Assembly: GCF_001194135.2 (NCBI RefSeq)
Contig: NC_068986.1
Location: 114,642,563 to 114,706,562 of the forward strand
From: Octopus bimaculoides
Lineage: Eukaryota
DNA length: 64,000 nt
Direction: 5' to 3'
The position numbers and the translations under genes are program-made. Numbering within the stretch: the stretch's first letter is position 1; every line of letters starts with the position of its first letter. This document shows positions 3,407 through 54,014 of the stretch, in pieces. Below the pieces are notes generated by a model, which searched no databases, was not told the origin of the DNA, and saw nothing but the letters and a program-made list of their open reading frames with translations.

Positions 3407-3442
3407 GACTAAATATATATTTTTTATTTTTTTCAGGTGAGT
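3407..3442 (+). promoter_or_regulatory. Candidate recursive splice site (ratchet point)
   Basis: gactaaatatatattttttatttttttcag|gtgagt: branch-like ACTAAA, U-rich tract and CAG, abutted directly by a consensus GTGAGT donor. Lies in a long sense-strand intron. Confidence 0.5.
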
Positions 3443-3490
3443 GTCACACTAAAAACAAATTGGATTTTAACACCTACAACAACAGTATGG

Positions 3491-8915: not shown

Positions 8916-8926
8916 GNNNNNNNNNN

Positions 8927-13875: not shown

Positions 13876-14210
13876 GATGCGATATGATATGCTTGAGAAA
13901 ACTTGAGTCAAGTAAAACCAATATCATAGCTGTGGCCAGTGCTCCCTGACTAGCACCTGTGCCGGTGGCATGTAAAAAGCACCATCCGAACGTGGTCAAT
14001 GCCAGGTCTGTCTAACTGGCTCCCGTGCCAGTGGCACATAAAAAGGCACCCACTACACTCTTGGAGTGGTTGGCATTAGGAAGGGCATCCAGCTGTAGAA
14101 ACATTATCACATCAGATTGGAGCCTGGTGCTGCTGCTGGCTCTCCAGACCTCAGTCAAACCGTCCAACCTATGCTAGCATGGAAAGCGGACATTAAACGA
14201 TGATGATGAT
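13876..14210 (+). mobile_element. RTE-type 3'-end repeat (GGAAGGGCATCCAGCTGTAGAAAC core, (GAT)n tail)
   Basis: Has the ...GCTTGAGAAAAC..AAGTAA ORF end, the core and the tail CATGGAAAGCGGACATTAAACGATGATGATGAT. Other copies lie near 19565, 19941, 24795, 35586, 39870, 43450, 52120, 56411 and 57900. Confidence 0.8.
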
Positions 14211-20146: not shown

Positions 20147-21667
20147 CATATATATAATATATACATACACACTGATACACACACACACACAGAGGCATAC
20201 ATATTATGTAATAGGTATAAATGTATGTTTGTGCATATGTAATATGAATGTACATATACAAATATATGTTTACACCTGTCCAAGTCTTTCAATTCTCTAA
20301 TCTAGGTAATACTTTATATGAACCTTTTATTCCTATGCGCACGTACATAGAAACACACACTTCAAAAAGAGACGTGCATGCATTGACACATCACATGTAG
20401 AAATACACTCACATACACAAACACAGGTACATACACACAAACACAAATACACTCACACAAACAGACACACACACACAAGTNNNNNNNNNNNNNNNNNNNN
20501 NNNNNNNNNNNNNNNNNNNNNNNNNNNNNNNNNNNNNNNNNNNNNNNNNNNNNNNNNNNNNNNNNNNNNNNNNNNNNNNNNNNNNNNNNNNNNNNNNNNN
20601 NNNNNNNNNNNNNNNNNNNNNNNNNNNNNNNNNNNNNNNNNNNNNNNNNNNNNNNNNNNNNNNNNNNNNNNNNNNNNNNNNNNNNNNNNNNNNNNNNNNN
20701 NNNNNNNNNNNNNNNNNNNNNNNNNNNNNNNNNNNNNNNNNNNNNNNNNNNNNNNNNNNNNNNNNNNNNNNNNNNNNNNNNNNNNNNNNNNNNNNNNNNN
20801 NNNNNNNNNNNNNNNNNNNNNNNNNNNNNNNNNNNNNNNNNNNNNNNNNNNNNNNNNNNNNNNNNNNNNNNNNNNNNNNNNNNNNNNNNNNNNNNNNNNN
20901 NNNNNNNNNNNNNNNNNNNNNNNNNNNNNNNNNNNNNNNNNNNNNNNNNNNNNNNNNNNNNNNNNNNNNNNNNNNNNNNNNNNNNNNNNNNNNNNNNNNN
21001 NNNNNNNNNNNNNNNNNNNNNNNNNNNNNNNNNNNNNNNNNNNNNNNNNNNNNNNNNNNNNNNNNNNNNNNNNNNNNNNNNNNNNNNNNNNNNNNNNNNN
21101 NNNNNNNNNNNNNNNNNNNNNNNNNNNNNNNNNNNNNNNNNNNNNNNNNNNNNNNNNNNNNNNNNNNNNNNNNNNNNNNNNNNNNNNNNNNNNNNNNNNN
21201 NNNNNNNNNNNNNNNNNNNNNNNNNNNNNNNNNNNNNNNNNNNNNNNNNNNNNNNNNNNNNNNNNNNNNNNNNNNNNNNNNNNNNNNNNNNNNNNNNNNN
21301 NNNNNNNNNNNNNNNNNNNNNNNNNNNNNNNNNCATATATATAATATATACATACACACTGATACACACACACACACAGAGGCATACATATTATGTAATA
21401 GGTATAAATGTATGTTTGTGCATATGTAATATGAATGTACATATACAAATATATGTTTACACCTGTCCAAGTCTTTCAATTCTCTAATCTAGGTAATACT
21501 TTATATGAACCTTTTATTCCTATGCGCACGTACATAGAAACACACACTTCAAAAAGAGACGTGCATGCATTGACACATCACATGTAGAAATACACTCACA
21601 TACACAAACACAGGTACATACACACAAACACAAATACACTCACACAAACAGACACACACACACAAGT
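20147..21667. other. Assembly gap (853 N) flanked by an exact 334-bp direct duplication
   Basis: 20147-20480 is identical to 21334-21667. N-run spans 20481-21333. Other gaps: 326-335, 8917-8926, 22460-22544, 34150-34367, 47283-47292. Confidence 0.95.
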
Positions 21668-22331: not shown

Positions 22332-24240
22332 TGGGTGTAAAATATGGTTTTCTTCACTTTAAAAATTATGTAATATAGTGGAGAGAGAATGTGTATGTAC
22401 ATAAGTCACTAACCCATGCCAGGATGGAAGACAGACGTTAAATGATGATTATATATATANNNNNNNNNNNNNNNNNNNNNNNNNNNNNNNNNNNNNNNNN
22501 NNNNNNNNNNNNNNNNNNNNNNNNNNNNNNNNNNNNNNNNNNNNATATATATATAAATAAATATATGTATGCATATAATGTAGTATATATGTGTTGTGAA
22601 CAACAGGTTAGAATGTATGTGTAGCACAATTGGGGAAGTGTGGATGAGTATATATATATATATATATATATGTGGATGCATGCACCTGTGATACTGAGTG
22701 CATGTGTGTATATGTGACAAGTGAGCGAGTGTGTGTGTTAACTAACACAGCACAATTGTGTACAGTACTCCATAGAAGGTTGGTTAGTGCAACATCATAT
22801 ATTCCAGTGCAACAGACCTGCATTGGTTAGAAGTAGAGACAATAATATTGGGGAGGGGGTGCAGAGGTTGTCTCTATCCCCATCTTACCTGCAACCCCCC
22901 CTCCAACTGTCTACACCTACCTTCTATCCCACTCTCTTTCCTCCCTATCTTCTCTCAACTGATCACTCATAAACACACACACACACACACAACCACCCAC
23001 ATGTCACTACTCTTACTCTCTCTAACCTCTGTACTCCCCCCTCTATTCACATCCAACTCCATCCCACCACAGCACCATCTCTATTAATATTCCCCACCAT
23101 CCACCTGTACATAACAAACTGTTCGTTAGGTAAGACTGAAATCAATAACAGTGAAACTTGTGTTCTTGATGTGGGTTCCTCTCTGCTAGCATGGGGTTGG
23201 AGTAGAGGATGGTGGCAGATGATGTCGGTGATGATAATGGTGGTGGTGGTGGTAATGATGATGGTAATGATCATAGTGATACTCATGATAATCGTGCTTA
23301 TCATCACCATCGTCATTGCAATCATCTTCACCATAACTATCATCATAATCAATCATCTCCATTAATACTACCACCATCATCAACACAACTATTGCCCACT
23401 TCGACACCACTCTCATTAGCACCATCATCAGTTTTACTACTAAAAGATAAAACTCTCCAGAGGAGGGCTAGGAAAAAAGTTTAAACATTTTTTGCAAAGA
23501 ATGCGGTACAAACTAATACAAATAATTCTAAAGACCCAGTGTTCAGCAACACTGGTAGTGTTAATAATTCTGAGGTCAACAACACTGCATAATATATACA
23601 TACATTGAGGATATATATATATACGAGTGTGAGTGTCCTCTCTCAACTATGTGGTTTCAGGTTCAATCTCATTGTACAGTACTTGAACAAGTGTCTTCTA
23701 CCATATTTTTAGGTTTGCCAGAGGCTGTGTCCCTGCATAGCCATAGTCCAGTCTCTAAAACCTGCAAAATACACACACACACACACAATGGTTATATATG
23801 CATGTGTGGGAGTGTACATACACAAATGTATGCACATATTTACACTGATATAATTTGCACATATGCACAAAAGTATGTATACATGCCATTATATAGATAT
23901 ATACACACACATACACATGTACCCCTCCACATACAGAATAGTACAAGTATGTTATGTACAGTTTAACAATGCAAATATTGAACAGATGTTAGTACTACAC
24001 TGTTGCATCCAAAGCTGCACACACATGCACACAAACATAGCAAACACAAGGGCCAATGGCAACATCTTTAGATAACAGAAATAGCAGCTAACTCTCCCTC
24101 AACTCTCTGCACCATCACAATAAACAAAAAAAAAAAAATTGTTTATATAATGTCTGAAAAAAGTGTGGTCATGGTTGGATTGCCTTTGATAGATCTGCTG
24201 GAACAGAGTTCACCTAGGGCCAAACAAGTACAACAAGCAT

Positions 24241-27600: not shown

Positions 27601-29434
27601 AAGCTACCTACTTATTGGATTATAATAGAAGTGGCTTAGTATTCTACATGTATATCCATTATGGAATCCACAGTTGAATCAGCAAGGCTGAATTACATAT
27701 GCAGTCCATTTATCAGGCTTCCACAAAGTTTCCGCCTCAGTTTCATGCAGTTTTGGTCAATCTATGGTATGTTAGAAGTTACATGTGCATGAAGTCACAT
27801 GGGGAAATCAAGGACTTCTTTAAAATACATGATTATGCCACAATAGACAATCATTGTTTCAATATCTACTTTTTTTATGCTTGCATGGGCCCCACAGAAA
27901 TTATGATCTTGAAGAGAGAAAGACTCTGACAAGTTTAAATCCCCCAAGACATATTCATGAAGCTGTCGCCATGATTTCACCAGGAGTTAAAGAGCCCAAC
28001 GAAAGGGATGACTAAATTATATAAACACATCATACACACCCATAGACACTGATATGTTGAGGGTGTTTACCCTCAGAAAATATATATTTTTTTAAAATTT
28101 ATATTTACTTATCTGTAATAGTAAACGTTACCTTAAACTACCATTGTCATAATGACCACCATCACCCCACTCAATAGCAACATAAACACCTACTTATTAC
28201 TCTAACCTTGAAATCACCCACACCTGCTATTTCTCTCTTTTATTTCCGGTTTCTTCAGACATACACACACACACACTTACCTGTCCACGACACCATGACC
28301 ACTCGACTATGATCGGTGTCAATGTCCTAATCAGTTCAACTATTCTGTTATTGACAATCAGTTACCATCACCATCATCACTCTTAACACAGTCAACGCAA
28401 ATAGATCATCCATAACTACCATCTTGATCCACTCCTCACTACTACAACTACAAGTAGTGGTTAGAATAGTTAGAATAGACACAAGGACGGCATCCCTACG
28501 TGGTCGCTTGACATGCTATATATTGCAGCCATATCTGCAGCAAATCACTCTTGATAGTTTTAAACAAGGATATATTGAACAATGCATTCCATAGTATATA
28601 AAAAGTATGCGATTTAAAATTTTTTTTAATGGTTTCAGTCATGGAACTGTGGTCATGTTAGGGCACCGCCATTCTGAGATTTCTTTGACCATATATTTCT
28701 TGATTCAAGGTTGACTTAGGGCATACCAACGAAGAAGTCTTGCTAGTAATAGCAGGTACAACTATCTCAAAGAGCACCGAACTCTTTCATGAAAAGAATA
28801 CATGGCATAATGTATAGTGAATGAAAAAGGATGGATGGTCATAACTAGAATGCCTTTGACCACAGGCTTACTTGTTCAGGATTGACTTGCAGTTAAATAT
28901 TCACAACAGCTACAATTACTACCATAAACAACCACTACTATTTTGTTCGTACATATTACTACGACTACTATCATCACAACAACCAGAACTTGAAAACAAA
29001 AATATTTTCAAGGAGTGTTAATGGGGCTGTTTTCTAATCTCCCTAACCTACATGCTGACCACTGGTCGTCTCTTCTCCACCCCTAACACACCCCAGCCAC
29101 TGTTCATCTCTGCTACCGCCAAGACTGACCCCACTCCCAGCCCCAGCCAAAAGCTATTCTAACCTCATCTATTCTACAAAAACAATTTATTCATCTTTCA
29201 CCCCTCACTACACTACCATTCAGTCCAGTTTTTGACCAATAGAATTAAAGGTCCAGTTGGCTGATTAGGAATAATCTTACTTATATTTTTAGGTGTGGCC
29301 CCTTCCCTTGCCCCCATATATCACATGGTACAATCCCGTAGCCTTTTCATTCCGACCAAATACTTCTAACTAGTTGCTTTATCCATCCAACTATTTTGTT
29401 TTTTTTCCTCTTTTTCTCTCCATATATTTTGTAG

Positions 29435-29563
29435 AAAACGTGAAGATTTATATACATATATTTTTTAAGTTGAAACTAAAATATCGAGAACTGAGGAGGC
29501 TTTCAAACACATTCTGATATTATCGACAATTCGGTATCCTGTGATAAAAAAAAAGCCAGGTTG
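29435..29563 (+). other. Putative 5' UTR portion of the Pro-rich exon
   Basis: 129 nt between the acceptor (AG 29433-29434) and ATG 29564. Contains no ATG and four stops in the ORF frame (29441, 29471, 29477, 29492). Confidence 0.55.
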
Positions 29564-30352
29564 ATGGAGACCATTAATAAGGAACCCAACCACCACACGA
29601 GTGCTGAAGCTACTTCTAGTGGAACCCAAACTTTACCACAAGGTGTGGGCCAGCCGGCTTTACCAACACTCAGACATAACATTCAAGAAGTAACAAGGGA
29701 TAGAATGCCAGATTCTTTCCCATTCAGAGTCCGAGACGAGAAGAATAATTCGCAACCAATTGTTGTTACGCAGGTACAATCCCAGTTACCATTAAATACC
29801 ATGCTAGGGTATCATGAGCCAAGGCCAAGTGGTTACACGTCTAACGTAATGCTACCTCCTCCGCCATCTCCACTTCCATCACAGTCGCCCCAAACAACGA
29901 CGACTCCATCAGCAAGTGCTGTTCCTCTTCCACTTCCCGTTAGCATGGATAGCAACGTTTTACGCATGAGAACTGACCCTACGAGACGAGTTAACTTCCA
30001 TCAGAACCCGTTGTTCGTAACTCCGAATTACGAAACTACATATGGAGCCGTCCCAGCACCAGTTTCGCTCTACCCTCGCTTACCAATCTCGGACGATAAC
30101 GCAGGAATGACTTTCGGATTTCCCCGACCTGTTCAGATGATGCAACCGCCTCCTCTGATGTTGGGCAACGACTATCCTCTCCCAAGCCCTCTCATCGACA
30201 ATAAGCCCTATCTCGTTCCTACTCCGATGCCGGAACTACCCCACGAACTCCACCCTACTGCTGGTGGCGGCGCTATTCTATCTAGCCCTATACTGAGTTT
30301 ACCTTCTAACCCCTCCCCTATTGCCACATCTCCATCATTACATCAGCATGCT
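29564..30352 (+). CDS. msi: Candidate alternative N-terminal coding exon of Musashi (263 aa, Pro/Ser/Thr-rich, predicted disordered)
   Basis: Longest non-low-complexity, gap-free ORF in the window (ATG 29564, METINKEPN...SLHQHA). It ends at a phase-0 donor GCT|gtaagt (GT at 30353) just before its stop codon, in phase with the msi acceptor at 38850. A strong acceptor (ttttttcctctttttctctccatatattttgtag) lies at 29434. Linkage to msi is inferred. Confidence 0.72.
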
Positions 30353-31461
30353 GTAAGTTGAAAGTTTACCTGTCTTTCTAACAGATTATATTAATACTTG
30401 CTACTCATTTTTTTTCTAAATTTTTCTTTTCTTCATAACCCTTTTTGCATGGGTTGATCCCGTTGTATCCAGTTTCTTATTAACCCACTTCTTGTTGATT
30501 TCATTGTTTTGTTAAGAATGAATGAATAATGAGGCCAATATGAACTCTCAACATTGGCATAAGACTATGTATGAAATATGTGTTCGTCTCTATTGCTATA
30601 TAACCAGTAAAATCATTTAGTTTTAATTCATTAGGAATATTTTACCAGCATTTCTGTCGAGCAGTTTTTAAAAAAAAAATTATTTCATTGTTCACGGCAA
30701 AACAACTCCAGACTTTCTTACACGCCATACACACATATAATGTATTTGCGTTCATTCTTGAATTGTATTTAATTCAAACAGCCATGTGTGTCACAACATA
30801 TATGCCATATATTTATACTCCACTGACAAAAAATCGGGAAGCATGAAACTAGAGAAGCAAGGAGAATCTCAGTTTAAATAAATATATGCATGAACTTCAT
30901 ATCACATGTAATATTATCTTACACTCTTGCTTAGAAACACATAATATATAACGTGCACTCACATGTGGGTTGACATGGAATATATATGCCGTGTGTGTTT
31001 ACTCGTGCGGATAATGTTATCAATACCCTCTAGTTAAGTCGTCAATTACAATTTCCCACTAATTAATAGTTTTTACCTCATTGATTATCACAACCTTACC
31101 ATATATGGCAGTACTATTAATTGCACCACCACCACCACCACCACTACTACTCAAACCACCATACACACCAAGCTTCTCTCTCCAACAACAATCTATGGCT
31201 TATTTAAATTCTTTCTTCTCAGATCTAGTTCCAGTGTGTTTTATAGTTTTTAATCAATAAACAAATTTGGCATATTATTTTTATTGCTGTTATCATTGAA
31301 ATCATTATTATTGATGTTAGAAATCATTATTATGGTAATTATTATTGTCATTATTATTATTACTATTAATAGTAGTAGTATATTGATCATCAGCTGTTAT
31401 ACCCAGTGGAACAATAATCAGATTAAAAAGAAACGCACTCTTTAATGTGTGTTATTGATTT

Positions 31462-31737
31462 CTAAGTTAGATATAAGGCTGTAGATATTAGGGAAAGGTA
31501 ACAGTCACTTATATAATAATAAACTATTAGGTACACGACTGGTACATTTTTATTTCTCTCGGCATCTTTGTACAGAACTGTGCCTCTCACCACTCGATTT
31601 TGCTTCTGGCGATCTTTCGGTATGAGTCCTAAATATCGGCCTTTTCCGTAAAAAGTGTCTTCGGCAATCTTTACCAAAGTTCGGCCTTGCTTCTTTATAC
31701 AATACGCATTTTCCAGTGAAATTTCTTTGCAATACAT
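31462..31737 (-). mobile_element. Possible degraded piggyBac transposase C-terminal fragment
   Basis: ISLENAYCIKKQG...GRYLGLIPKDRQKQNRVVRGTVLYK...YYISDCYLSL resembles, by eye, the LNAY helix and the GRHFP-IP-KQN-RC cysteine-rich tail of piggyBac/PGBD4-type transposases, with Cys residues lost. Confidence 0.4.
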
Positions 31738-34700
31738 TTTAGATAATGTAGATAACGATTATATGAAGGAAAAAAATTAAAACCTTTTTTTAAATATCCC
31801 CACTCCGACTTTCCATCCTTCGTTAAATGCATATTTGTTATGAATTTTTCCGAGATAGGTTTTCGGGGGTGTAGATTATGATTATCCTGATAAAATTTTG
31901 GTGGGGGAACATGGAATTTTGAATAGTTTCATCCCCACCAACCCGGAAATGAACAAATATTCATTGTTTGTGTTGTAACTTGAATCACTCGCCACCTTTT
32001 TTGTTTTGCTCAGAGAAATTCACTGAAATAAATTTTTCGTGCAATGCTAAACAATTTGATTATTCAATTCATATTACATAATAAAGCTGGCAAAGTTTTC
32101 AGTAAAAAATACAGTTATTGAAGTCGGAGGAATTAGCCGAAACGTCTCCGTACCTATATCATTAAAAAAAACAAAAAAAAAACATGCATTTTAAAGAAAG
32201 ATGAGGAAATAGACCAGCGGTGGAACAGACTTCAGTAATTATACCCTTCTCAAAATTACCAATACCCGACGCCACGGCTTCTCGAAGGAATAATGTTCGA
32301 CCTTCATCTCCAAATTTAAAGCGCAAGGCAATGTTAGGAAGATTCTTTTTTATTCTCTACTGAAGTGTTACTGTCTGAAGAAACCGAAGAGACGGCACCA
32401 GTCTCAATCAATTGTTAGAATTATTAAGTAATTATGAATAACGGAAACGGTTGATATAAGCGGAGTTCCTCAGTTTTTCTTCGTCCGCCAAGAAGCAGAC
32501 GATACTTTTGCAGTGACAAAGAATACAAGAAATACTTGTGTTTTAATGTCTCAGTTAGTCTTACTTTTGAACAGAATATGCACATTTTCCAATTATTAAG
32601 AAATAATTATTAAGAAACAAAAATTTCCATCGACTCACCTTATTTAAATTAATCTTCCTTGTAGTTTAGATTAAATCGATCCAGTACTTAACTCAGCCAA
32701 GCTCGGATTAGGCACTGCACCCCACACACCTCAAGGGAAATCTTTTATACATTAAAAATTTTTTTTTATTTATTATCACTGATATTATTTTTTGTAGTAT
32801 TCCTGTTTCAAATAACGGAAATTACAATCGATTCTGAAAAAAATTCTCTTTCGAAATTTCAATTTTTTTCTATTTACCCCCTCCCTCCCTTCTTTACTCC
32901 TCTAACTTTTTCATTTCCTATGAGGTATGAGGCATCTTAATCCAAAATACAGACCATGGCTGGTTGATTTTATTTATTTATTGTTTTCGATCTTGAAAGA
33001 ATGAAAGTTTAAGTGGACATCGGCGACACGAAGATTCATGCATTACAACTAAATATACTACATGAAATTTTGTCCGTCGCTCATCAAATCCCTTCTTTTA
33101 ACATTAATGATTTCATTATTTTGGTATATATTGGTAGAATGATATCCCCAATACGTTTCTATCAGCCTCTTAAACATGATCGATATAATAACTAGGTCAT
33201 GTTTTTTTTAACAGGAGATGTACCATCAATAAATAATAAAATAGTGGATGGAAATGGTCACACTTTTCCTTATATCCTGTTTCATTTAATTACTACAAAT
33301 AAAGAAATGTAATATTATTTAATTGAATAATATTACATCACTTAAATAGAAATTTTACAACACAATATATATTAAAATAACTACCATTTTATTCAATATC
33401 TTTAAATGAGAATGCAGACGTAGTCAAGGAATTGAGTGATTCTTCTTCCCCACGCCATTTTTCCTTTGTGTTTCAGATAACGGTGATTACGATTCTGAAA
33501 AAAATTAATTTTTACATTTTGCTCCCATCATCTAATCTCTTGCCCTTTTTCTTATTCATGGGGTGGTAATAGTTCTTCCAAAATTCCATCCAAAAAACAT
33601 TAAGCTAGTTATTGAAATATTCTTGTGACATTTTTTTCTCGAATTCGATAAAATGTTTTATACACACGCAGTGACATTTAGTTCTGGGGCGCCCATCACG
33701 ACGCAGATTCGCAGATTTATAATCATAGGCATTACAGCCGGCACCATTCCGTCTTTTTTGGTGATATGTAGGACTCCTTTGGGGACTAATGCAGAATCGC
33801 ACCTCTCCTTGAAAAATGCATTTTTTTAAAGAAATTTTTATGATTCCTACGTTTTAGATGTTGGAGATTACGAATATGCAAAAAACAACTTCTTTTAAAT
33901 CCACCCCCACCTCCATTTAAAATTTTGAACTTTTTCGAAACTTTTTTTAAAACCCACCTTTTCCAAATTTAAAATCCCCACCTCAACATTCTCTTTCCCC
34001 AAATTTAAAATTTTTCAAATTTCACCCCACCTGAGATAGAGATTATAGAGAGATAGATATACTGAGATAGATATATTGAGATAGATAGATATGAATAAAC
34101 GGATAGGGATAAATAGACAGACAAATAAATGGATGAAAAAGTTTAAAATNNNNNNNNNNNNNNNNNNNNNNNNNNNNNNNNNNNNNNNNNNNNNNNNNNN
34201 NNNNNNNNNNNNNNNNNNNNNNNNNNNNNNNNNNNNNNNNNNNNNNNNNNNNNNNNNNNNNNNNNNNNNNNNNNNNNNNNNNNNNNNNNNNNNNNNNNNN
34301 NNNNNNNNNNNNNNNNNNNNNNNNNNNNNNNNNNNNNNNNNNNNNNNNNNNNNNNNNNNNNNNNNNNATTTTTCTACGTATTTCGAAAAAAAAAAGAAAA
34401 TTACTGAAAAAAGGGAAAATTGAAGAATTGGGGGAGGGGGAGGGAATTAAAATTTTTTTTGCAGAATCAGAATCTCCGTACTCGAAAGTGGGGGATTCTG
34501 TAAAAAAAAAGAAAAAAAAAACGAAAGCGGGTGCGGTCCACATTGTTTACGTCTGCCCATTGTCCAACCAGTTAAACCCCGATAGCGTGATTTGGTTGTT
34601 ATTTCTAAAAGGTTGTAGAATTTTATCAGTCATCAAACTTTCTGAATGACACGCCAAAAGAAAGAAAAAAAGAATGTCTGCTCCATCCAGGCTAACCTGG

Positions 34701-35062
34701 AACAACATAATTTACAATAAACACGTTTCTTCAACATGGCCTTGGCGATGATGACGAAAGCAAACTCAAGAATTTATAGGAAATAATTTTTTAAAAAATT
34801 GTTACTAAGGTGATAATGTCAAATTTCCTTCAAGTAATTGAATTTTTACTGGTGGCAAATAGTTGACAGTGGCCATGCTGTGACATTGCCTATGGGAAGA
34901 AACATGTAATTGATATTCTGGTTGATAATTTACTTCATTAACTATTCATTTCTCATAAAATAAAATTCCTTTGTTTGTTTGTATGTATGTATGTATGTAC
35001 GTACGTACGTACGTATGTATGTATGTAAAGGAAATCTCTCTCTCTATATATATATTATTATT

Positions 35063-35581
35063 GAAGGCTGCGAGCTGGCAGAATCGTGAGCACGCTGGAC
35101 GAAATGCTTAGCAGTATTTCACTCGTTGCTCCGTTCTGAGTTCAAATCCCGCCGAGGTCGACTTTACCATTCATCCTTTTGAGGTCAATAAAATAAGGGT
35201 ACTATTCAAGAAGAGTGGGCCCGGTGCGCGTCCTCGCGTATTTGCGCATCCGCGCTAGCTAGTCGTGACTAGTCGATCTTACAACGACTATCTAGCGCGA
35301 ATGCGCAAAACATGTAAGAGGGTTTTTTAAAACAAAGTAAATCATTTTTTTTTTAAACAAAGTAAATAATATTTTGTGCAAAAAAAGTTATTTACTTTGT
35401 TTAGAAAAAACTCTCATAGGATCCACTAGGTACGACTAACTAGCGCGGATGCGCGAGTGCGCGCACCGGGACCACTCTTGAATAGTACCAAAATAAGTAC
35501 CAGTTGAACACTGGAATCGATGTAATCGACTCATCCTCACTTCCCCCCAAGTTGCCCTCGTGGCAAAAATTTGAAATAATT
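35063..35581 (+). mobile_element. SINE (GTCGATAAAATAAGTACC family) interrupted by the 35198-35489 MITE
   Basis: Head GAAGGCTGCGAGCTGGCAGAATCG and B-box-like GAGTTCAAATCCC. Resumes after the MITE as TACCAGTTGAACACTGG. Related copies lie at ~35953-36150, 5127-5326 (-), 49570-49780 (-), 50500-50690 (-) and 59165-59390. Confidence 0.8.
35198..35489. mobile_element. Non-autonomous DNA transposon (MITE), Merlin-like, 292 bp, inserted in a SINE
   Basis: ~60-bp TIRs starting GGTACTATTCAAGA. Exact 8-bp TSD AAAATAAG at 35190-35197 and 35490-35497. GG...CC termini. Confidence 0.85.
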
Positions 35582-35880
35582 ATTATTCATTTAGCGTCCG
35601 ATTTCCATGCCGTCATGGGTTAGACGGTTTGATTGAGACTGATAAACAGGAGGGCTGTACCAGGCTCCAGTTTGATTTGGCCTAGTTTCTACAGCTGGAT
35701 GCCCTTTCTAACGCCAACCACTCTAAGAGTTCAATGGTTGCCTTTTACGTGTCTCCTCAAGCACAGCAAATCGCCAAAGGTCTCGATCACTTACCAATCA
35801 CTTCCATGAGATCCAACATCCGAAGATCATGCTTCATCACCTCGTTCCATGTCTTCCTGGGTCTATTATTTTATTATTGT

Positions 35881-35882
35881 TA

Positions 35883-35923
<41 letters not shown>

Positions 35924-35951
35924 TGTAGTAGTAGTAGTAGTAGTAGTAGTA
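35881..35951. repeat. Compound (TAT)n-(GTA)n trinucleotide microsatellite
   Basis: TAT run switches to GTA run at ~35924. Confidence 0.9.
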
Positions 35952-36229
35952 AACAGTCTGACAAAACTGCGTTGCGGTTGTTCCCCCTCTCTTCGTTTGT
36001 CTTTACGTTCTCGTTCAAATTCCGCTAAGGTCGCCTTTGCTTTTCGTTCCCCCGGGGGTCGATAAAATAAATACCAGATGAACACTGCGATCGATCTAAT
36101 CGACTTACCCACCGTTCCTTAATTGCTGGCCTTGTGTCAAAATCTGAAATCAATATCAATCAATAACCCCCTCATGTACGTTTGGGTTATCTCTCTTTGG
36201 TGCCTTTAATCCCGGGCCTCTTTCAGTTT

Positions 36230-36312
36230 TGCTGCTCGTCGACGTCATTTTGCGCGAAACATTTTTTACACAAAGGATGTCGGTTTCTTTGGCGGGAGAA
36301 AAAAATGTATGT
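36230..36312 (+). promoter_or_regulatory. CpG-rich promoter-like motif cluster (CRE-like core and two E2F-like sites)
   Basis: GACGTCA 36241-36247, GCGCGAAA 36252-36259 (TTTCGCGC on minus strand), TTTGGCGGGA 36288-36297, followed by donor-like AAT|gtatgt at 36307. Confidence 0.35.
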
Positions 36313-37310
36313 CCTTACTTCATTAAATGGTTTTAACAAAAAATATTAAGACCAACTTTGTTCAATGATTCGTCTGTATTGCTGTTCTCTTACACTGACA
36401 TTATGCAGTGCTTCAAGCACACTACATCACTAAAGTGCGTGTATATATGTGTTTGTTATATTAAGTATATAAAACTGTGTGTGACTAACGTTCCAAAGTG
36501 GAATAAAAAGATTTATTGAAAGGAAGAGGAATAGTTTAATGGCCTGGATAGAATCCTTCCTCAGAAGGAAGAGTGATGCTGCCTAATGGCTTTCTACTTG
36601 TTTCCACTAACTTCTCACAGACTATCGCTAGTTCCCTCGTAAAAATAATAGCCCATGAGAAGAAAAAAATTTAAGATGTTGCCAAGTTAGATACTTTTTA
36701 TCTTATACATTTGTGTGAATTCGTGTATGTATTTGTAAATGTGTTTTCGTATTTGTATGATTATTTGTGTGGATTTGTGCGTGAATGTAACTTGTTTGCT
36801 GGTATTTCTATGATCTTGCTCACGTATTTATGTCTTTATATATGTGTATTTGTACATTATTTTCTAATTCTTATCAATTTAATCTCATTAATTACTAAAT
36901 AATAAAACCAACTTTGTTTAGATGACAGTTATATAACCTCTCTGGTTAATTATTCCTTAATCTGTTTATACTGCTAAACCTAACCAGATTATTAATGCAG
37001 TACACTTAAACACGATATCGATACATGTTTGTGTTCATATGAGTAATTTACACCTATGTGTATAACATGTGATTTACTTATTTACATGGATAATTACACC
37101 CGTTTGTCTTTACATTGGTTATTGGGGATGTTTGTTTTGTTGACATTAATTTACTCGTTTAAGTTAGTTTACACCTTCATGTGTTTTCATCTACGAGTGC
37201 TTGTGTTCTCCTTGCCATGTATTTTGTGAATACTTCGGTTGCCATTTTCATGTCCCCTACACATTCATGTCTTCTTATTTTACTTTATAACGTAGCAATC
37301 TGTAGAAGGC

Positions 37311-37519
37311 ACCCTTGCCAGTGACACATAAGTGGTGCCGGTTACACAGAAGAGGCACCCACTACAGTTTTGCAGTGGTTGGCATTAGGAAGAGCATCCA
37401 GCTGTAGAAATCCCAAATCAGCCTGGAGCCTGGTACACTTCTCTGGCTTACCAGTTCCAGCCAAACTGTCTAACCCATGCCAGCATGGAAAACAGATGTT
37501 AAATGACGATGATGATGAT
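37311..37519 (+). mobile_element. RTE-type 3'-end repeat copy
   Basis: Core GGTTGGCATTAGGAAGAGCATCCAGCTGTAGAAAT and (GAT)n tail. Confidence 0.8.
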
Positions 37520-38390
37520 ATATGGATATCCTTCCTATCACTCACCCAGCACAAACTTTGTACATTTGATAGTACCACCAACATTAGAATGTTTGTCTGA
37601 CTGAAAGCTACATAGTTCTCTATTCTGTATCTGTATTTTTTTTTTTTAAGAATTACTTCTCTTGATAGATTGCTTGCACTGTGGCTTGTGGAATACACAT
37701 CTAAATCATAAGTTTATGTAGTAGGTATTTAGTCTTGCCATACCAATACATCCCTTAGTACTCTTACTCCAGAATGAACCAAAGAACAGTTTGAGTAGTT
37801 TCACTCGGTCATTCAGTATCAGCTCATACATGGATTTATTTTTGCTTGTTCCCCAGAGAGACAGACTGAGAATATGACGAGCTTACAACTGCTTGTGAAA
37901 AATGCTTATTTATGAGTAACAAGCATAGCCATAAATAGTTGTAAGCTACTCTCTCATCATTATGACTGATTTGCTGGTAATGATTTGTGAAACTTGTCAA
38001 GTTATTCTTCATTTAATTCTGCCAAGAGAAACATGTCATTTACTAACAGCAAGGCTAAGTCTGTGTTAAAGATAAGTAAACAGATTTATGATTTATTCCA
38101 CATACACTGTCTCAGTATAAATAATAAGGATTAGTGACAGGAAAGGCATCCGGCTGTAAAACAATGCCTCGGTGGCATCTCCAATCCATGCAAGTATGGA
38201 AAAACAGATTTAGAAACAAATGTGTGCATGACAAATGTACATTTTATTTATTATATATAAAAGCAATGAAAGGAATAATTATAATGGTATCACATTTATT
38301 AATCAGTTAACAATTATTTTAATAAACAGTGGGATTACTATAGCAATCAACATGTTGGATCTTATACAAAAATATGCAAGTCTATGCAAT

Positions 38391-38690
38391 CATCATCATC
38401 GTTTAACGTCCGCTTTCCATGCTAGCATGGGTTGGACGATTTGACTGAGGACTGGCGAAACCAGATGGCTACACCAGGCTCCAATCTGATTTGGCAGAGT
38501 TTCTACAGCTGGATGCCCTTCCTAACACCAACCACTCCGAGAGTGTAGTGGGTGCTTTTACGTGCCACCGGCACGAGGGCCAGTCAGGCGGTACTGGCAA
38601 CGGCCACGCTCAAAATGGTGTATTTTATGTGCCACCCACAAAAGAGCCAGTCCAGGGGCACTGGCAACGATCTCGCTCGAAAGTCCTTAC
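38391..38690 (-). mobile_element. RTE-type 3'-end repeat copy, 160 bp upstream of the msi acceptor
   Basis: CATCATCATCGTTTAACGTCCGCTTTCCATGCTAGCATGG...GTTTCTACAGCTGGATGCCCTTCCTAAC (reverse orientation). CpGs retained. Confidence 0.85.
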
Positions 38691-38849
38691 ACAAGTGCCA
38701 GAAAGACGATGCACAGGTGCCATCATGATTTCAAAATCCCACCAGTAATCTTATCAAAATTGTTAAAATAATACTATGCTTTTTACTACACACACATACA
38801 TACATACACACAAATGCATTTTATAATAATGTTTGTCTTCTTTTTTCAG

Positions 38850-38942
38850 ATGGTGACCCGTACAAAGAAAATATTTGTTGGTGGATTATCAGCATCTACT
38901 ACTGTTGATGATGTCAGAAATTACTTTAATCAATATGGCAAG
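38850..38942 (+). CDS. msi: Musashi-family RNA-binding protein, coding exon for first part of RRM2 (93 nt, phase 0/0)
   Basis: Acceptor tttgtcttcttttttcag|ATG and donor AAG|gtaagc. Translates [31 protein letters not shown], matching the Musashi RRM2 start ([14 protein letters not shown]) including RNP2 IFVGGL. Confidence 0.97.
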
Positions 38943-39028
38943 GTAAGCAGAGTTTCTTGTAAGCCTTGGAGAAGTCTGTGTGGTGTTAGGACTGTGATGT
39001 AGTTTCTTACAATTGTATTACTACTTCT

Positions 39029-40340: not shown

Positions 40341-40767
40341 TGGGAACAAATGACATCATATGTGTCATGGTGACACTTGTTTAGAACAATCATGATTTCA
40401 AGACATGAGGAAACACATGCATGTACATATACACACACACACACACACACATGTATATACTGGAAGAGTGTCCAGCAATAGAAGACCTTCCTCAACAAAG
40501 TCCACCCAAGCCATACAAGAATGTAGAAGTGGAGATTAAATTATATGTATGTGTGCATGTACACACACACACACACTCACTCACTCACTCACTCACTCAC
40601 ATGTATACATGCAGCACTTTTGACCAATACCTTATGAGCAAAATTTGGTAGGCAGAAACTGCAAAAGTCCCGTCAGATGTACATGCATGTGTGTGTGTAT
40701 TTGTTTAATGATTTCCTGTTGACTTTTTTGTTTTTTTATGCTAGCATAATTTGGATAGAGACTTTAA

Positions 40768-40973: not shown

Positions 40974-41030
40974 TCAAGTCAGAATTTTATGGATGGATGC
41001 AATTTTCACACACACACACACTTACATATA

Positions 41031-41154
41031 CAGGGTGTCCACAAGGTCTGGGTGCATGGAGTAAATAAAATCATAACATAAACAATTAAATATAAGAAAT
41101 AATTATTTCTTAAAGTATGTGTTAATCCCCATGTACCCAGACTTTGTGGACACC

Positions 41155-41157
<3 letters not shown>
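41031..41157. mobile_element. Tc1/mariner-type MITE, 127 bp
   Basis: TA|CAGGGTGTCCACAAGGTCTGGGTGCATGG ... CCATGTACCCAGACTTTGTGGACACCCTG|TA: 29-bp TIR with 2 mismatches and TA TSD. Confidence 0.88.
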
Positions 41158-41192
<35 letters not shown>

Positions 41193-41196
<4 letters not shown>

Positions 41197-41480
41197 TCAT
41201 CATTTAACATCTGTTTTCCATGCTGGCATGGGTTGGACGGTTTGACTGAGGTCTGGAGAGCCAGTGGCTGCACCAGGCTCCATCCAATCTGATCTGGCAA
41301 TGTTTCTACAGTTGGATGCCCTTCCTAACACCAGTCACTCTGAGAGTGTAGTGGGTGCTTTTTACATTCCGCCAGCACAGGAGCCAGTCATGGGGTACTG
41401 GCATCGGCCACATTCAGATGATGCATTTTACATGCCGCTGGAACAGGAGTCAGTCAGGGGGTAATGGCCACAGCTACGAT
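41193..41480 (-). mobile_element. RTE-type 3'-end repeat copy
   Basis: ATCATCATCATTTAACATCTGTTTTCCATGCTGGCATGGG...GGATGCCCTTCCTAAC in reverse orientation. Confidence 0.8.
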
Positions 41481-44617: not shown

Positions 44618-46874
44618 TTAAGAGAGATATATATATGTATAAAATTGCCACCTATGAATAAACTGAAGAGTCATGTAACAAAATACATGCATCTATACAA
44701 TACCACACCATGAGCCAATGGTTGACCTACAAGAAACAGCAGTCAGAGTTTCAAATGACATAACACCCTACAGCTTGGATGGTTTTGACATCTGCTTGAT
44801 CAGAGTTGAATAGGGGCTATACTACTGCTACTATCTAAAATAATCATTATTCCATAATATTAAATGAGATGTCTATGGTGGTTTTTATTTTTATCATCAC
44901 TCCACCTTTTTTTTTTCCCATTATCTACGAGGAATTATATAATCTAAAGTCTTTCCCCTCTCCTTTTTCTGTTTCGCTAAGATAGTAGTTTATAATTTGA
45001 GAAAACTTTCGGAGTTATTTCTAGCAGTCTGAATGACAGCATAGGGGCTTCTTTCTTTAGGTTGTGTGGGACTAATCTTCAGGAACTCGTAAAGGAGTCT
45101 AGAAGGTTAATAAGGCTGAGGTGCATATATATATATATATGTACACACGCATTCACATATATACACACACATACATATACACACACACATATATATAAAC
45201 TCATAAAACAGGGAACTAGCAGTGAATATATTTACTGAAGAAGAAACTGAGCCAATAAGGAAGTCAGGGAGAAAATAGTAAAAAGAGGCAAGACACTCCC
45301 CCAACACATACTCAATAAAATACACACAATTGTTCTTTGTTAAGAATGTCTGACCCCTAAGGGACCAGCCGCTCTCCCATCTATCTCTACCCCCCCCCCC
45401 TTACAAAACTACTGTTGTACTCAGCAGTAGTCTCCTTCCTTCTCCTGCTGCTGTGGTCTCTGTATATCTGTTCAGTGTTTGTTTGTAAAGACAATAGGCC
45501 TGGCAAGAAGACATGAATGAATATTGGAAGAAGAGTGCAAGGGGCTGAGAGAATAAAAGAATAGGTTAAAAAGAACGATTGGTATGAAAGAATCCCTACA
45601 AAAAAAGGAAAGAGTGGCAGGAGTTGTGGTGGGAGAGACAGTTATATTACACTTAAATCTCTTGTCTCTTCTTCCTTCCCTAGCTTCAGGGCTAGATGTG
45701 TGTGTATTTGTTTTGTGTCAGTGGGAGGTTTCTGTATGTGTCAAATCTACACACCTGTCTTGTGTATACTTGCTGGATGTGTATGTATGTGTGTGTGTAT
45801 ATACACATATACACACGCACACATATACATGCAAACACACATGCATATATGTGTGTATATCTATGTTTGAGGTTTGTGTGTGTGTGACAGGGTTTGTCAG
45901 TCTGTATGTGTGTGGTGAGGATATATCTGGTTTCTGTTCCTCTGTGTGTGTGTGTGTGTGTGTGTTATTGGGTTTCCTGTAGACTACATCTCTGTCTTAA
46001 TTGTTCTAGAAAGTCCTGTGGCTTGTTTTAACTATCCCCCCTGCCTCCACCACTTCTTACTCATTTTCTGCCTTCCTGTCTGCTTCTTCCTTTACCTCTT
46101 CTATTTCTTCCTTCCACCACTGTCACCACCTCCACCCCTCCCCACCTTCCACATCTCACTCTATTACTTTCTCTCTCTCTCTCTCTTTTCCCCCACCTCA
46201 CTACCACACTGACAGCATCACTTCTTATCCACCTTTTCTCTGCCTCACCCACTCCACTTTCTCTTTTATTCTCCCCCTTCCTTACCTCTGCAGTGTGTTC
46301 TATCTCTATGGTTCCCATTATAATGGCACATGCAGTGGATATCTAGTTCATTACTGTTGCCTGGCCTTCTTCTCTCCCCTTGACCAGAAAGGGCAGGTAG
46401 TGTCCCTTCACCTCTTAGCTTTACAGTGGACAAGGCTGGAAGGATTAATCACAGCATAAGCATAGGTATGGTTAAGAATCTCACTTTGCTACCACATGGT
46501 TTGGGGTTCAGCCCCACAGCAAGACACCTTGGACAAGAATCTTTTTTAGCTCTGGCCAATCAATGCCTTGTGAGTGAATTTTGTAAATGAAAACTGCATG
46601 CAAGCCCATTGTGTGCATGTGTGTCTTTGTGCACGTGTCCCCACTCCACCAACTGACAACCAGTGTTGATTTTTGTACCTATAACCTATAGAATAATTAT
46701 GAGGCTTGCTTTGGGGGCAATTTATCTAACTATATAACCCTCTAAGGCAGCACCTCAAGCATTGCCACAGTCCAGTAACAGAAGCAAGTAAAAGATAAAA
46801 CATAAAATTAAAACTAATGTTTTGAACATAACTTCACCAAAAGTTGTGATATAAAATTTGAAAGCAAAATTTCA

Positions 46875-47503
46875 GGATCTATTTTAAAACCGGGGCGCCA
46901 GTTTTCATTTATGTTTTATGTAGTGTTTTTGGTACGGAAAGACTTTCAAACTTCGTATACTTATCTATTTTGTGTTATAGAACAGAAAAATATTTTTGTA
47001 TTCGAATTTATTTCATGTAAAAAATTGTCTTATTTCGATAATTTCTACTAATCACTGACGTCTATTCAGTTGAAAACAGTTAGCACTGTAACGGTGTATA
47101 TCGTATTAATCTCCTAACCCTAACCCTAACTAGACTGTTAACCGTAACCCTAACCCTAACTCTAGAATCCAAACTCTAAAATTGTTACACACGTAGATAC
47201 GCACAGCGTAATTTATTATATAAACAATATATGCATATAAATTACAATTAAACCGGATGAAATATGTCACAGGGAATAACATNNNNNNNNNNCCATTGAG
47301 CTGAATAGACGTCAGTGATTGGTTGAAATTACAGAAATACGACAACTTTAACATGGAATAACTTGCGAATTCCTTTTTTTTGTTAAGAAGACTAAGAGTA
47401 AAAGATGTTTTATATGACACATTCTACCAGTGTCCCAAGTTTCAAAGTGTTTCGTTAGTGTTTCGTTAAGAAAATACTGGCGCCCCCGTTTTAAAATAGA
47501 CCC
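46875..47503. mobile_element. Foldback-like non-autonomous DNA transposon with 8-bp TSD
   Basis: TIR GG(A/G)TCTATTTTAAAAC(C/G)GGGGCGCCAGT. Exact TSD AAATTTCA at 46867-46874 and 47504-47511. Has an inner inverted pair (AATCACTGACGTCTATTCAG) and TAACCC repeats, and contains a 10-N gap. Confidence 0.85.
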
Positions 47504-47841: not shown

Positions 47842-48207
47842 TTAAGACTGTATGTGTGATTTGCAGAATGTGATGGCTATTTAGGGACTATGGAGAGTCT
47901 CATTCATTGGCTATGTTAACAGAAGTGGTCTCCTGTAGATTGGCATTGAAAGGTTAGACTTCAGTGTAAAAAATTGACTAATAAACTTTCACTATTTGGT
48001 CCCTACCAGTGGCAAAGCTGTCACCCTGACTAATCTTCATTAAAAGAATTTTAAAGCGTCTTCAATGGAGTAAAAGGTTTATTTCGGCCAGTTTGTTCTT
48101 TCACCTTTATACAACCCACAATCATGCATTCTCTTTGCCTTACATTCAACATGTCATCTGTTCTTTATCATCATATTAAATACCATTTCCCTATCTATTC
48201 CTCTCAG

Positions 48208-48256
48208 GTTGAAGACGCTATGCTTATGTTTGATAAAACCACAAACAGACATCGAG
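48208..48256 (+). CDS. msi: Musashi-family RNA-binding protein, next RRM2 coding exon (49 nt, phase 0/1)
   Basis: Acceptor ttccctatctattcctctcag|GTT and donor CGAG|gtatgt. Translates VEDAMLMFDKTTNRHR(G), the Musashi segment leading into RNP1 RGFGFVTF. In frame with 38850-38942 across a 9265-bp intron. Confidence 0.96.
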
Positions 48257-48811
48257 GTATGTAGGACTTCTTGCGTTTTCATTTTAGATTTCTTTGTTGT
48301 TTGTTTGCTTCTATTTTTGTGTGTCAAGACCTTATGTTTTCTTAAAAAGAAAAATATTTGTTGTGTTGTTGTGAATGTTCAGATACAAAACCCTCCTTAA
48401 ATATATCAAAATATAGTAGTGTATTGAAAAAAAGAATCTATTTAATATGACCCTTGGTAGTAAGAGCTCAAGGATTTTAAAGAATTTGATTAGAGCCTTT
48501 GCAATGAGGGGCTGTGTTAATCTATGACAGCTGGTGATTTTGTAGTATGGAATGTAAACTTCCATACTTTTGGTAACGAGAAATGATAGGAAAGAGTTGC
48601 ATATGAACATACCAAGTGAGAGTTATCAACACTGGGTCCATCTCATTGCTGAAGACTAGGTGTTTGGATTTTTATGCCCTGTTCTTCCTGGGGTACCACC
48701 AATATACTAAGTTTGTCTTTGAGAGCATTTAGGTATCTTCATAGGAAAAAAAGTTAATTTCCATCAAATATGAAGATATTGTAAAGAAAAGGTATTAACA
48801 TGACTATAGAG

Positions 48812-53736: not shown

Positions 53737-54014
53737 TCGAGCATGGTCGTTGCCAGTACCACCAGACTGGCTCCCATGCAGGTGGCACATAAAAAACACC
53801 TTTTGAGTGTGGTTGTTTCCAGAACCGCCTGACTGGCCTTCGTGCCAGCAGCACGTAAAAGCACCCACTACACTCTCAGAGTGGTTGGCGTTAGGAAGGG
53901 CATCCAGCTGTAGAAACTTTGCCAGATCAGATTGAGCCTGGTGCAGCCTCAGTCAAACTATCCAAGCCATGCCAGCATGGAAAGCAGATGTTAAACGACG
54001 ACGACGATGATGAT
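53737..54014 (+). mobile_element. RTE-type 3'-end repeat copy
   Basis: GGTTGGCGTTAGGAAGGGCATCCAGCTGTAGAAAC core and AAACGACGACGACGATGATGAT tail. Confidence 0.85.

What the first reader, a model, noticed from the sequence alone, without database searches (positions are those of the whole stretch)
29435..38942. Candidate Musashi isoform with RRM1 swapped for a 263-aa proline-rich disordered N-terminus
Seen: inside the msi intron that precedes the RRM2 exon is a 789-nt complex, non-repetitive ORF (ATG 29564). It ends exactly at a consensus phase-0 donor (CATGCT|gtaagt), 9 nt before its own stop. The msi RRM2 exon at 38850 starts in phase 0, so splicing gives ...[20 protein letters not shown]. 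Known: Musashi proteins use tandem RRM1+RRM2, with RRM1 giving most (G/A)U1-3AGU affinity. Inference: this is a single-RRM Musashi with a long Pro/Ser/Thr-rich IDR carrying many SP/TP sites (PPPPSP, LPSP, PTPMP, SSP). It could act as a dominant-negative, a condensate-forming or a kinase-regulated variant, possibly lineage-specific.
Basis: partly seen in the sequence, partly recalled or inferred. Interest (0 to 1): 0.9.

Follow-up and report, generated by a model that had tools for sequence, protein, structure and literature searches.

The report
Conserved coding exon inside Musashi intron
A real, evolutionarily conserved protein-coding start exon sits in the long intron in front of the second RNA-binding domain of an octopus Musashi gene. 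It probably makes a one-domain Musashi variant like the short forms already annotated in the fruit fly, but no transcript could be checked.

Summary
There is a 263-codon ORF (ATG 29564 to 30352), and a perfect GTAAGT donor starts at 30353, the only one in 12 kb. The Musashi RRM2 exon at 38850 starts in phase 0.

The ORF is truly coding. An orthologue in a second octopod (dS 0.22) keeps it open. All 5 indels are 3 nt, while the flanks have dozens of other lengths. dN/dS is 0.36, and 0.14-0.21 in the core. ORF GC is 49% against 31-37% in the flanks. Stops in all three frames upstream force translation to start at its own ATG.

It has no Pfam, PDB or transposon relative and is predicted disordered.

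Splicing to RRM2 is frame-compatible and has a precedent. Drosophila Rbp6 has the same 93- and 49-nt exons and four annotated RRM2-only transcripts. No transcript data could be reached here.

A rival acceptor at 31223 lies in a ~99% conserved block. Using it would end the protein after one more codon, giving a 264-aa stand-alone product.

SP/TP sites are no more frequent than composition predicts. RRM1 exons are not in the window. The assembly gap touches no exon, but continuity across it cannot be tested.

Verdict: real coding exon about 0.9, Musashi fusion about 0.5. This is a new variant of a known kind.

The parts
29194..29340 (+). Conserved upstream block, about 95% identical to the orthologue. 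It holds CCAAT (29236-29240) and a TATA-like run (about 29282-29291). Candidate promoter of its own; this is inferred.
   Evidence: Alignment and sliding identity; sequence read.
29435..29563 (+). 5' untranslated part of the exon. A strong pyrimidine tract plus AG ends at 29434 in the window but is deleted in the orthologue. The AG at 29468-29469 aligns with an AG in the orthologue. All three frames have stops here, and the in-frame stop at 29492 is conserved.
29564..30352 (+). Coding part of the exon: 263 codons, Pro 18%, Ser/Thr 18%. No known domain; predicted disordered.
30353..30381 (+). 5' splice site GTAAGT (30353-30358) and the intron sequence just downstream. The stretch 30347-30381 is 100% identical in the orthologue.
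30990..31125 (.). Conserved non-coding block with transcription-factor-like motifs (CCATATATGG, TAATTA). Possibly an enhancer; this is inferred.
31190..31580 (+). Conserved block, about 99% identical over 31190-31345. The rival 3' splice site ttctttcttctcag|ATC TAG puts the first exon base at 31223. AATAAA lies at 31256 and 31518. No conserved strong donor follows. It is not a structured RNA.
34150..34367 (.). Assembly gap (N) in low-complexity intron sequence. It touches no exon, and continuity across it cannot be tested here.
38850..38942 (+). Musashi/Rbp6 exon of 93 nt encoding [31 protein letters not shown] (start of RRM2). Phase 0 at both ends, with a strong acceptor.
   Evidence: same size as Drosophila Rbp6 exon 7.
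48208..48256 (+). Next Musashi/Rbp6 exon, 49 nt, encoding VEDAMLMFDKTTNRHR(G). It ends in phase 1.
   Evidence: same size as Drosophila Rbp6 exon 8.

Best explanation
The stretch from about 29435 (or a start site near 29310) to 30352 is a real start-codon-bearing exon of an octopod gene. It encodes a 263-residue disordered, Pro/Ser/Thr-rich peptide.

Most likely it is an alternative first coding exon of the Musashi/Rbp6 gene. It would be transcribed either from an internal promoter or after skipping of the RRM1 exons. Its phase-0 donor at 30352|30353 would join the phase-0 acceptor of the 93-nt exon at 38850.

The product would read ...[20 protein letters not shown].... It would keep RRM2 and the Musashi C-terminal region and carry the new disordered N-terminus in place of RRM1.

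Shown: the exon is coding, starts at its own ATG, ends at a non-chance donor, and matches the RRM2 exon in frame.

Inferred: the junction itself, the promoter, and any function. On established knowledge RRM1 carries most of Musashi's RNA affinity. Such an isoform would therefore bind UAG-type sites weakly. It would have to depend on partners recruited by its disordered regions, or compete with full-length Musashi for C-terminal cofactors.
For: Coding status:
- The orthologue P0001 on contigs L001-L004 is collinear with window 28594-33397.
- Inside the ORF all 5 indels are 3 nt. The flanks show 4-17 indels of mixed length per segment.
- dN/dS is 0.36 overall and 0.14-0.21 for codons 40-180. dS is 0.22. 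Mismatches by codon position are 24/16/42.
- No other open frame in 28594-33397 behaves this way.
- ORF GC is 49% against 31-37% in the flanks.

Start codon: stops in all three frames lie between the candidate acceptor and the ATG, and the in-frame stop is conserved.

Donor: GTAAGT at 30353 is the only copy in 28-40 kb, and 35 nt around it are 100% conserved.

Link to RRM2:
- Same strand, with phase 0 on both sides.
- 38850 is among the three strongest acceptors in the next 8.5 kb. It is the only strong acceptor there followed by at least 45 nt of frame-preserving open frame and a strong donor.
- The last indel, 9 nt before the donor, is in frame.

Precedent: Drosophila Rbp6 has exons of 93 and 49 bp like the window's. 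It has four transcripts encoding only RRM2, and Rbp6 protein is still detected when the 5' part of the gene, which leaves those four short transcripts intact, is deleted (PMC3507872).
Against: - No transcript, junction read or annotated protein with this exon was found. These collections also lack the canonical octopus Musashi, so this is absence of data rather than negative evidence.
- The acceptor at 31223 scores as high as 38850 and sits at the 5' edge of a ~99% conserved block. Its use gives ...HQHA-I-stop.
- RRM1 exons are not in the window, so it is not shown that this is an intron of a two-RRM gene.
- An assembly gap lies between the two exons.
- All 23 Musashi isoforms fetched from other species, about 18 of them molluscan, keep RRM1.
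Confidence: 0.5

Rival explanations
1. It is a stand-alone small gene nested in the Musashi intron, or an intronic-polyadenylation end. The donor at 30352 joins the acceptor at 31223. Translation then stops after one more codon (ATC TAG), giving a 264-aa disordered protein. The conserved block 31223 to about 31545 would be the terminal exon and 3' UTR, with AATAAA at 31256 and 31518. The peptide would never be fused to RRM2.
For: - The acceptor at 31223 scores 14.19, equal to 38850, and ranks second to third of 377 AGs.
- It sits about 30 nt inside the start of the best-conserved block of the region: 96-99% over 31190-31345, staying raised to about 31580 and then collapsing.
- No conserved strong donor follows, which fits a terminal exon.
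- Poly(A) hexamers are present.
- The block is not a structured RNA or a known RNA family.
Against: - The canonical Musashi transcript must itself skip this acceptor to reach RRM2, so it is demonstrably skippable.
- AATAAA/ATTAAA occur 15 times in 3.7 kb here, so their presence means little.
- The neighbouring conserved block 30990-31125 has no splice site and carries transcription-factor-like motifs. The whole zone may be an enhancer.
- Same-strand nested genes with a working poly(A) site would truncate the host transcript.
Confidence: 0.25
2. It is an unspliced single-exon gene. The GTAAGT is a coincidence, and the protein ends ...HQHAVS at the TGA at 30359-30361 (265 aa).
For: The orthologous contigs carry the ORF ending AVS-stop, collinear with the genome. 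If those runs were RNA-seq, this would be the observed transcript form.
Against: - The chance of GTAAGT falling within 12 nt of the ORF end is about 0.002.
- The contigs start in an (AT)n repeat, have no poly(A) tail, end at arbitrary points, and are 100% identical across runs. They look like genomic DNA, so they say nothing about splicing.
Confidence: 0.07
3. The donor joins an exon that is not visible here. That exon could be hidden in the 34150-34367 gap, too small to detect, or belong to a different gene. Alternatively, the scaffold join is wrong and the exon does not belong next to Musashi.
For: The gap is unresolved and its continuity is untestable. Cross-species data stop at 33397.
Against: No other candidate exon between 30400 and 38850 combines a good acceptor, at least 45 nt of frame-preserving open frame and a strong donor. 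No coding-like conserved frame exists up to 33397.
Confidence: 0.13
4. The ORF is a transposon-derived or chance open frame with no function.
For: It has no homologue outside one related species and no known domain.
Against: - It is single-copy in the window, and only one homologue cluster exists.
- It shows purifying selection and frame-preserving indels.
- It is a GC island and the longest ORF of the window.
- The abundant SINE-like repeat of the window does not overlap it.
Confidence: 0.03

Closest known systems
Drosophila Rbp6 short transcripts C-F (RRM2-only isoforms of the Musashi-1/2 orthologue; Siddall et al. 2012, PMC3507872)
   Same: The gene family is the same, and so are the 93-nt and 49-nt exons that open RRM2. 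A very long intron lies in front of the 93-nt exon. The isoforms encode only the second RRM. Rbp6 protein is still detected when the 5' part of the gene is deleted, a deletion that leaves the short transcripts intact.
   Different: Whether the fly short forms carry a long coding first exon was not checked here. The octopus exon adds a 263-aa disordered N-terminus with no detectable relative in flies or anywhere else. The octopus junction is unproven.
Human MSI2 alternative-first-exon isoforms (MSI2-328 and MSI2-324; bioRxiv 10.64898/2026.05.16.725683)
   Same: Alternative transcription starts give Musashi proteins different N-termini, and the disordered regions set activity and localisation.
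   Different: Only the short N-terminal disordered stretch (22 residues) differs between the two. The candidate here would drop RRM1 altogether.
Oyster Musashi isoforms with a cassette between RRM1 and RRM2 (Ostrea edulis X13 and X24)
   Same: They show that the intron at ...AQPK|MVTRTKK is at the same place in molluscs, must be phase 0 there, and hosts alternative coding exons.
   Different: The oyster exon is a 23-residue in-frame insert that keeps both RRMs. The octopus exon cannot be read into from upstream, because stops lie in all frames.
Lineage-restricted (orphan) genes nested in introns
   Same: There is no homologue outside close relatives. The product is disordered. The candidate unit is compact: promoter, coding exon, and a possible short terminal exon at 31223.
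   Different: It lies on the same strand and in frame with the host's next exon. Its own 3' end is not demonstrated.

Membership tests
Musashi/Rbp6 gene (the host) | RRM2 signature sequence [15 protein letters not shown]...DAMLMFDKTTNRHRG | tested here: met
   tblastn with human MSI1 (sequence recalled from memory) and with P0062 hits 38847-38945 and 48205-48258. 46 of 48 residues match P0062.
Musashi/Rbp6 gene (the host) | Tandem RRM1 upstream of RRM2 | tested here: inconclusive
   No RRM1 exon lies anywhere in the 64 kb window on either strand. It may lie more than 38.8 kb upstream, as in Drosophila, where the intron is 35.9 kb.
Musashi/Rbp6 gene (the host) | Conserved exon structure at the start of RRM2 (93-nt exon then 49-nt exon) | tested here: met
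   38850-38942 is 93 nt and 48208-48256 is 49 nt. Drosophila Rbp6 exons 7 and 8 are 93 and 49 bp.
RRM2-only Musashi isoform (Rbp6 C-F type) | First exon lies in the intron in front of the 93-nt exon, on the same strand | tested here: met
   The exon ends at 30352, which is 8.5 kb upstream of 38850 on the + strand. This is subject to the scaffold join across the gap.
RRM2-only Musashi isoform (Rbp6 C-F type) | Reading frame carries through the junction | tested here: met
   789 nt is 263 whole codons, so the donor is phase 0. The 38850 exon starts in phase 0.
RRM2-only Musashi isoform (Rbp6 C-F type) | Transcript that joins the first exon to the RRM2 exon | not testable with these tools
   No octopus transcript data could be reached. 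Exact look-ups and homology searches returned nothing fused, and the canonical octopus Musashi is also absent.
Protein-coding exon | Open frame kept across species, with frame-preserving indels and dN/dS below 1 | tested here: met
   All 5 indels are 3 nt. dN/dS is 0.36. Changes are biased to the third codon position.
Intrinsically disordered region | No folded domain, low-complexity-like composition, low structure-prediction confidence | tested here: met
   No Pfam hit and no PDB hit. AlphaFold2 mean pLDDT is 43.8 with essentially no secondary structure, although the alignment had only 2 sequences. Pro is 18%.
Proline-directed kinase substrate region | SP/TP sites enriched and conserved | tested here: not met
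   9 sites against 8.6 +/- 2.4 in composition-preserving shuffles. Only 4 of 9 are conserved.
Transposon-derived ORF | Transposase, reverse-transcriptase or other mobile-element domain; many copies | tested here: not met
   No Pfam family. Only one homologue cluster in 1.84 billion representatives. Single copy in the window.
Nested gene with its own terminal exon | Acceptor plus poly(A) site used inside the host intron | tested here: inconclusive
   A strong conserved acceptor at 31223 and AATAAA hexamers are present. The hexamers are common here, and no 3'-end data exist.

The most novel reading that the evidence does not exclude
An octopod-restricted coding exon, kept under purifying selection, replaces RRM1 of Musashi with a 263-residue disordered N-terminus. 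It would create a single-RRM Musashi whose targeting depends on the new disordered region rather than on tandem-RRM RNA recognition. The conserved block at 31223 would act as a switch between this fusion and a truncated, peptide-only product.
Probability: 0.4. Interest if true: 0.55.

Novelty: new variant of a known kind. Interest (0 to 1): 0.4.

Why it matters
Musashi proteins are central regulators of stem-cell and neural fate, and their activity is normally explained by tandem-RRM recognition of UAG-containing sites.

RRM2-only forms are annotated in Drosophila Rbp6 but have no assigned function. A second, independent case in a cephalopod would argue that single-RRM Musashi isoforms are a recurrent, selected feature of this gene. 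This case carries a long N-terminal extension that is conserved at least between two octopods. It would also give a concrete construct to test.

If the exon instead makes a stand-alone peptide, it is one more lineage-restricted gene nested in a long neural intron. That would be of modest interest.

Tried and rejected
Homology searches:
- A word-index search and a full HMMER profile search of the ORF found only one orthologue and no fused protein.
- A fused query (ORF plus RRM2) again found no fusion and showed that no octopus Musashi is in the collection at all. The absence is therefore uninformative.
- A 48-aa RRM2 query returned only short fragments.
- Exact look-ups of the window's ORFs found nothing on record.
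- The type and species of the SRA runs behind the orthologue could not be found in papers.

Rival identities for the ORF:
- Pfam and PDB gave no hit.
- There is no similarity to Musashi C-terminal regions; the best E-value was 0.05 without composition correction.
- The Takifugu hit P0061 is a mis-annotated internal duplication, not a relative of the ORF.
- The oyster RRM1-RRM2 cassette has no counterpart in the window.

Conserved block at 31190-31345:
- Rfam gave only sub-threshold hits at CA-repeats elsewhere.
- The block folds worse than shuffled sequence on both strands, so it is not a hairpin or snoRNA.
- It holds 4 Musashi-type (G/A)U1-3AGU motifs, 10 per kb against 3.6 per kb in the window. 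That is too few to weigh.

Other checks:
- SP/TP sites are not enriched.
- Recursive-splice-type sites were searched. The donor at 30353 is not one.
Full report
**Observation.**
- An ATG at 29564 opens 263 codons that end at 30352.
- The next bases are GTAAGT (30353-30358), followed by TGA (30359-30361).
- At 38850, after ttgtcttcttttttcag, an exon starts ATG GTG ACC and encodes [31 protein letters not shown]. It ends AAG|gtaagc at 38942, so it is 93 nt with phase 0 at both ends.
- A second Musashi exon, VEDAMLMFDKTTNRHR(G), is 48208-48256, 49 nt.

The open frame is the longest N-free one on either strand of the window, 288 stop-free codons against 221 for the next. It is a GC island of 49% against 31-37% in the flanks. 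It has no tandem repeats and is unique in the window.

**The gap.** The N run at 34150-34367 lies in low-complexity sequence between the two exons and touches neither, so no reading frame depends on it. Its flanks do not overlap each other and are unique in the window. The only related sequence I could obtain stops at 33397. Continuity, order and distance across the gap therefore rest on the scaffolder and could not be tested.

**Is the ORF a real coding exon?** A homology search found one protein, P0001. It is 260 aa, 80% identical, and comes from Logan assemblies of runs SRR11869384-91.
- Its contigs (L001-L004) are collinear with window 28594-33397.
- They are 100% identical to each other, start in an (AT)n repeat and have no poly(A) tail.
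- I read them as genomic DNA of a related octopod. I could not confirm the run type.

In the pairwise alignment the ORF has 5 indels, all of 3 nt. Every flanking segment has 4-17 indels of mixed length. Nei-Gojobori dN/dS is 0.36 (dS 0.22), falling to 0.14-0.21 for codons 40-180. Mismatches by codon position are 24/16/42, and the other two frames hold 11-20 stops. No other open frame between 28594 and 33397 shows this pattern. I take the exon to be protein-coding and under purifying selection, with probability about 0.9.

**Where translation starts.** Between the candidate acceptor at 29434 and the ATG there are stops in all three frames. The in-frame stop 72 nt upstream is conserved in the orthologue. 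No upstream coding exon can therefore read into this ORF; it must start at its own ATG.

The 5' edge is unresolved. One option is its own promoter: a 95%-conserved block at 29194-29340 holds CCAAT at 29236 and a TATA-like run near 29282. The other is a 3' splice site. Pyrimidine tract plus AG lies at 29434 in the window. That AG is deleted in the orthologue, where the same tract abuts the AG that aligns with 29468-29469. Either way the protein is the same.

**The donor.** GTAAGT occurs 9 times on the + strand of 63 kb, and 30353 is the only copy between 28 and 40 kb. Of 96 open frames of at least 80 codons, only this one ends beside one. The chance expectation is about 0.002. Thirty-five bases around it (30347-30381) are identical in the orthologue. 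I take the donor to be real.

**What the peptide is.**
- It has no Pfam family and no PDB relative.
- A profile search of 1.84 billion cluster representatives found only P0001.
- AlphaFold2 gives mean pLDDT 43.8 with essentially no secondary structure, though the alignment was shallow.
- Pro is 18% and Ser plus Thr 18%.
- There are 9 SP/TP sites against 8.6 +/- 2.4 in shuffles, and only 4 are conserved. The 'kinase-regulated' idea has no specific support.
- The best-conserved parts are residues 41-100 (57 of 60 identical) and 141-200.
- It is not related to Musashi C-terminal regions and is not transposon-like.

**Where the donor goes.** This could not be observed. Two acceptors stand out in the next 8.5 kb under a crude score.

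- *38850 (score 14.19).* It is the only strong acceptor there followed by at least 45 nt of frame-preserving open frame and a strong donor. Joining it keeps the frame and gives ...SLHQHA-MVTRTKK....
- *31223 (also 14.19).* The site is ttctttcttctcag|ATC TAG. It lies about 30 nt inside the start of the best-conserved block of the region. That block is 96-99% identical over 31190-31345, stays raised to about 31580, and then collapses. Joining it ends the protein after one more codon.

Around 31223, no conserved strong donor follows. AATAAA lies at 31256 and 31518, but such hexamers occur 15 times in 3.7 kb here. The block is not a structured RNA and not a known RNA family. A neighbouring conserved block at 30990-31125 has CCATATATGG and TAATTA motifs and no splice site. 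The zone may therefore be an enhancer rather than an exon.

**Weighing the two acceptors.** These points favour the fusion:
- Same strand and matching phase.
- The canonical Musashi transcript must itself skip 31223 to reach RRM2.
- The last indel, 9 nt before the donor, is in frame. That matters only if translation continues past the donor.
- There is a direct precedent in Drosophila Rbp6, the fly orthologue of Msi1/2. It has exons of 93 and 49 bp behind a 35.9-kb intron. Two of its transcripts encode both RRMs, and four (C-F) encode only the second RRM. Rbp6 protein is still detected in eye, brain and testis when the 5' part of the gene is deleted, which the authors attribute to the short forms (PMC3507872).

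The strength and conservation of 31223 favour the stand-alone product. I put the fusion at about 0.5, counting the case where both products exist. A product that is never fused gets about 0.3, through 31223 or read-through. The rest goes to unseen exons or a wrong scaffold join.

**Limits of the negative evidence.** No fused protein exists in the collections. The same searches also return no octopus Musashi at all. The best RRM2 match, P0062, is 46 of 48 aa but only 77-91% identical in DNA, so it comes from a more distant animal. Cephalopod absence from these collections therefore says nothing about expression. It also says nothing about how old the exon is. All 23 Musashi isoforms fetched from other species, about 18 of them molluscan, keep RRM1. 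Two oyster isoforms carry a 23-residue cassette between ...AQPK and MVTRTKK, so that intron is at the same position, must be phase 0, and hosts alternative exons in molluscs.

**How it would work (inferred).** On established knowledge, Musashi RRM1 contributes most RNA affinity and RRM2 adds recognition of a UAG core. The C-terminal disordered half binds cofactors; human MSI2 work shows that this half drives translational activity. A protein with RRM2 and the C-terminal half, but a new disordered N-terminus, would bind RNA weakly on its own. It could be recruited through partners of the new region, or it could compete with full-length Musashi for C-terminal cofactors. None of this was tested.

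**Novelty.** The isoform class, RRM2-only Musashi, is already annotated in Drosophila. New here are a long, conserved, apparently lineage-restricted coding first exon and a possible conserved switch at 31223. I rate it a new variant of a known kind, with interest 0.4.

Noticed in passing
window 31190-31580 (core 31190-31345): An AT-rich block about 99% identical between two octopods (dS 0.22). It starts with a strong 3' splice site at 31223, followed at once by an in-frame TAG. A canonical Musashi transcript (phase 0) spliced here would also end at once, giving an RRM1-only product. It holds 4 Musashi-type (G/A)U1-3AGU motifs and folds worse than shuffled sequence.
   Followed up: partly
window 30990-31125: A second conserved non-coding block, about 92-95% identical, with CCATATATGG (CArG-like) and TAATTA motifs. 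It may be an intronic enhancer.
   Followed up: no
window 3415-3444: Pyrimidine tract + AG|GTGAGT (ATATATTTTTTATTTTTTTC AG GTGAGT) in the long upstream intron. This is the form of a zero-length recursive splice site. One or two such 8-mers are expected by chance in 63 kb.
   Followed up: no
window, at least 14 copies, e.g. 14025-14211, 35587-35752, 37301-37720, 38389-38574, 41179-41358, 53861-54018, 56408-56567: An interspersed repeat of about 180 nt, in both orientations, 72-89% identical between copies. It gives the recurring pseudo-peptide ...FLQLDALPNANH.... None overlaps the coding exon.
   Followed up: partly
L001 1-195: The orthologous contig starts with (AT)n and a 195-nt stretch that has no counterpart in the window. 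Homology begins exactly at a conserved GTATATAAAAAG (window 28594). This is a lineage-specific insertion or replacement upstream.
   Followed up: no
window 45100-45900, 40400-40600, 41016-41169: Sub-threshold Rfam hits (mir-297, mir-466, mir-3149 and others), all on CA/TG-type simple repeats. They are artefacts of low complexity.
   Followed up: yes
window 326-335, 8917-8926, 20481-21333, 22460-22544, 47283-47292: Five further assembly gaps, of 10 to 853 N. Several long listed 'ORFs' are only runs of N.
   Followed up: yes
P0061 (Takifugu flavidus 'RNA-binding protein'): This public protein model repeats the segment [31 protein letters not shown] twice. It is probably an annotation or assembly duplication.
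   Followed up: no
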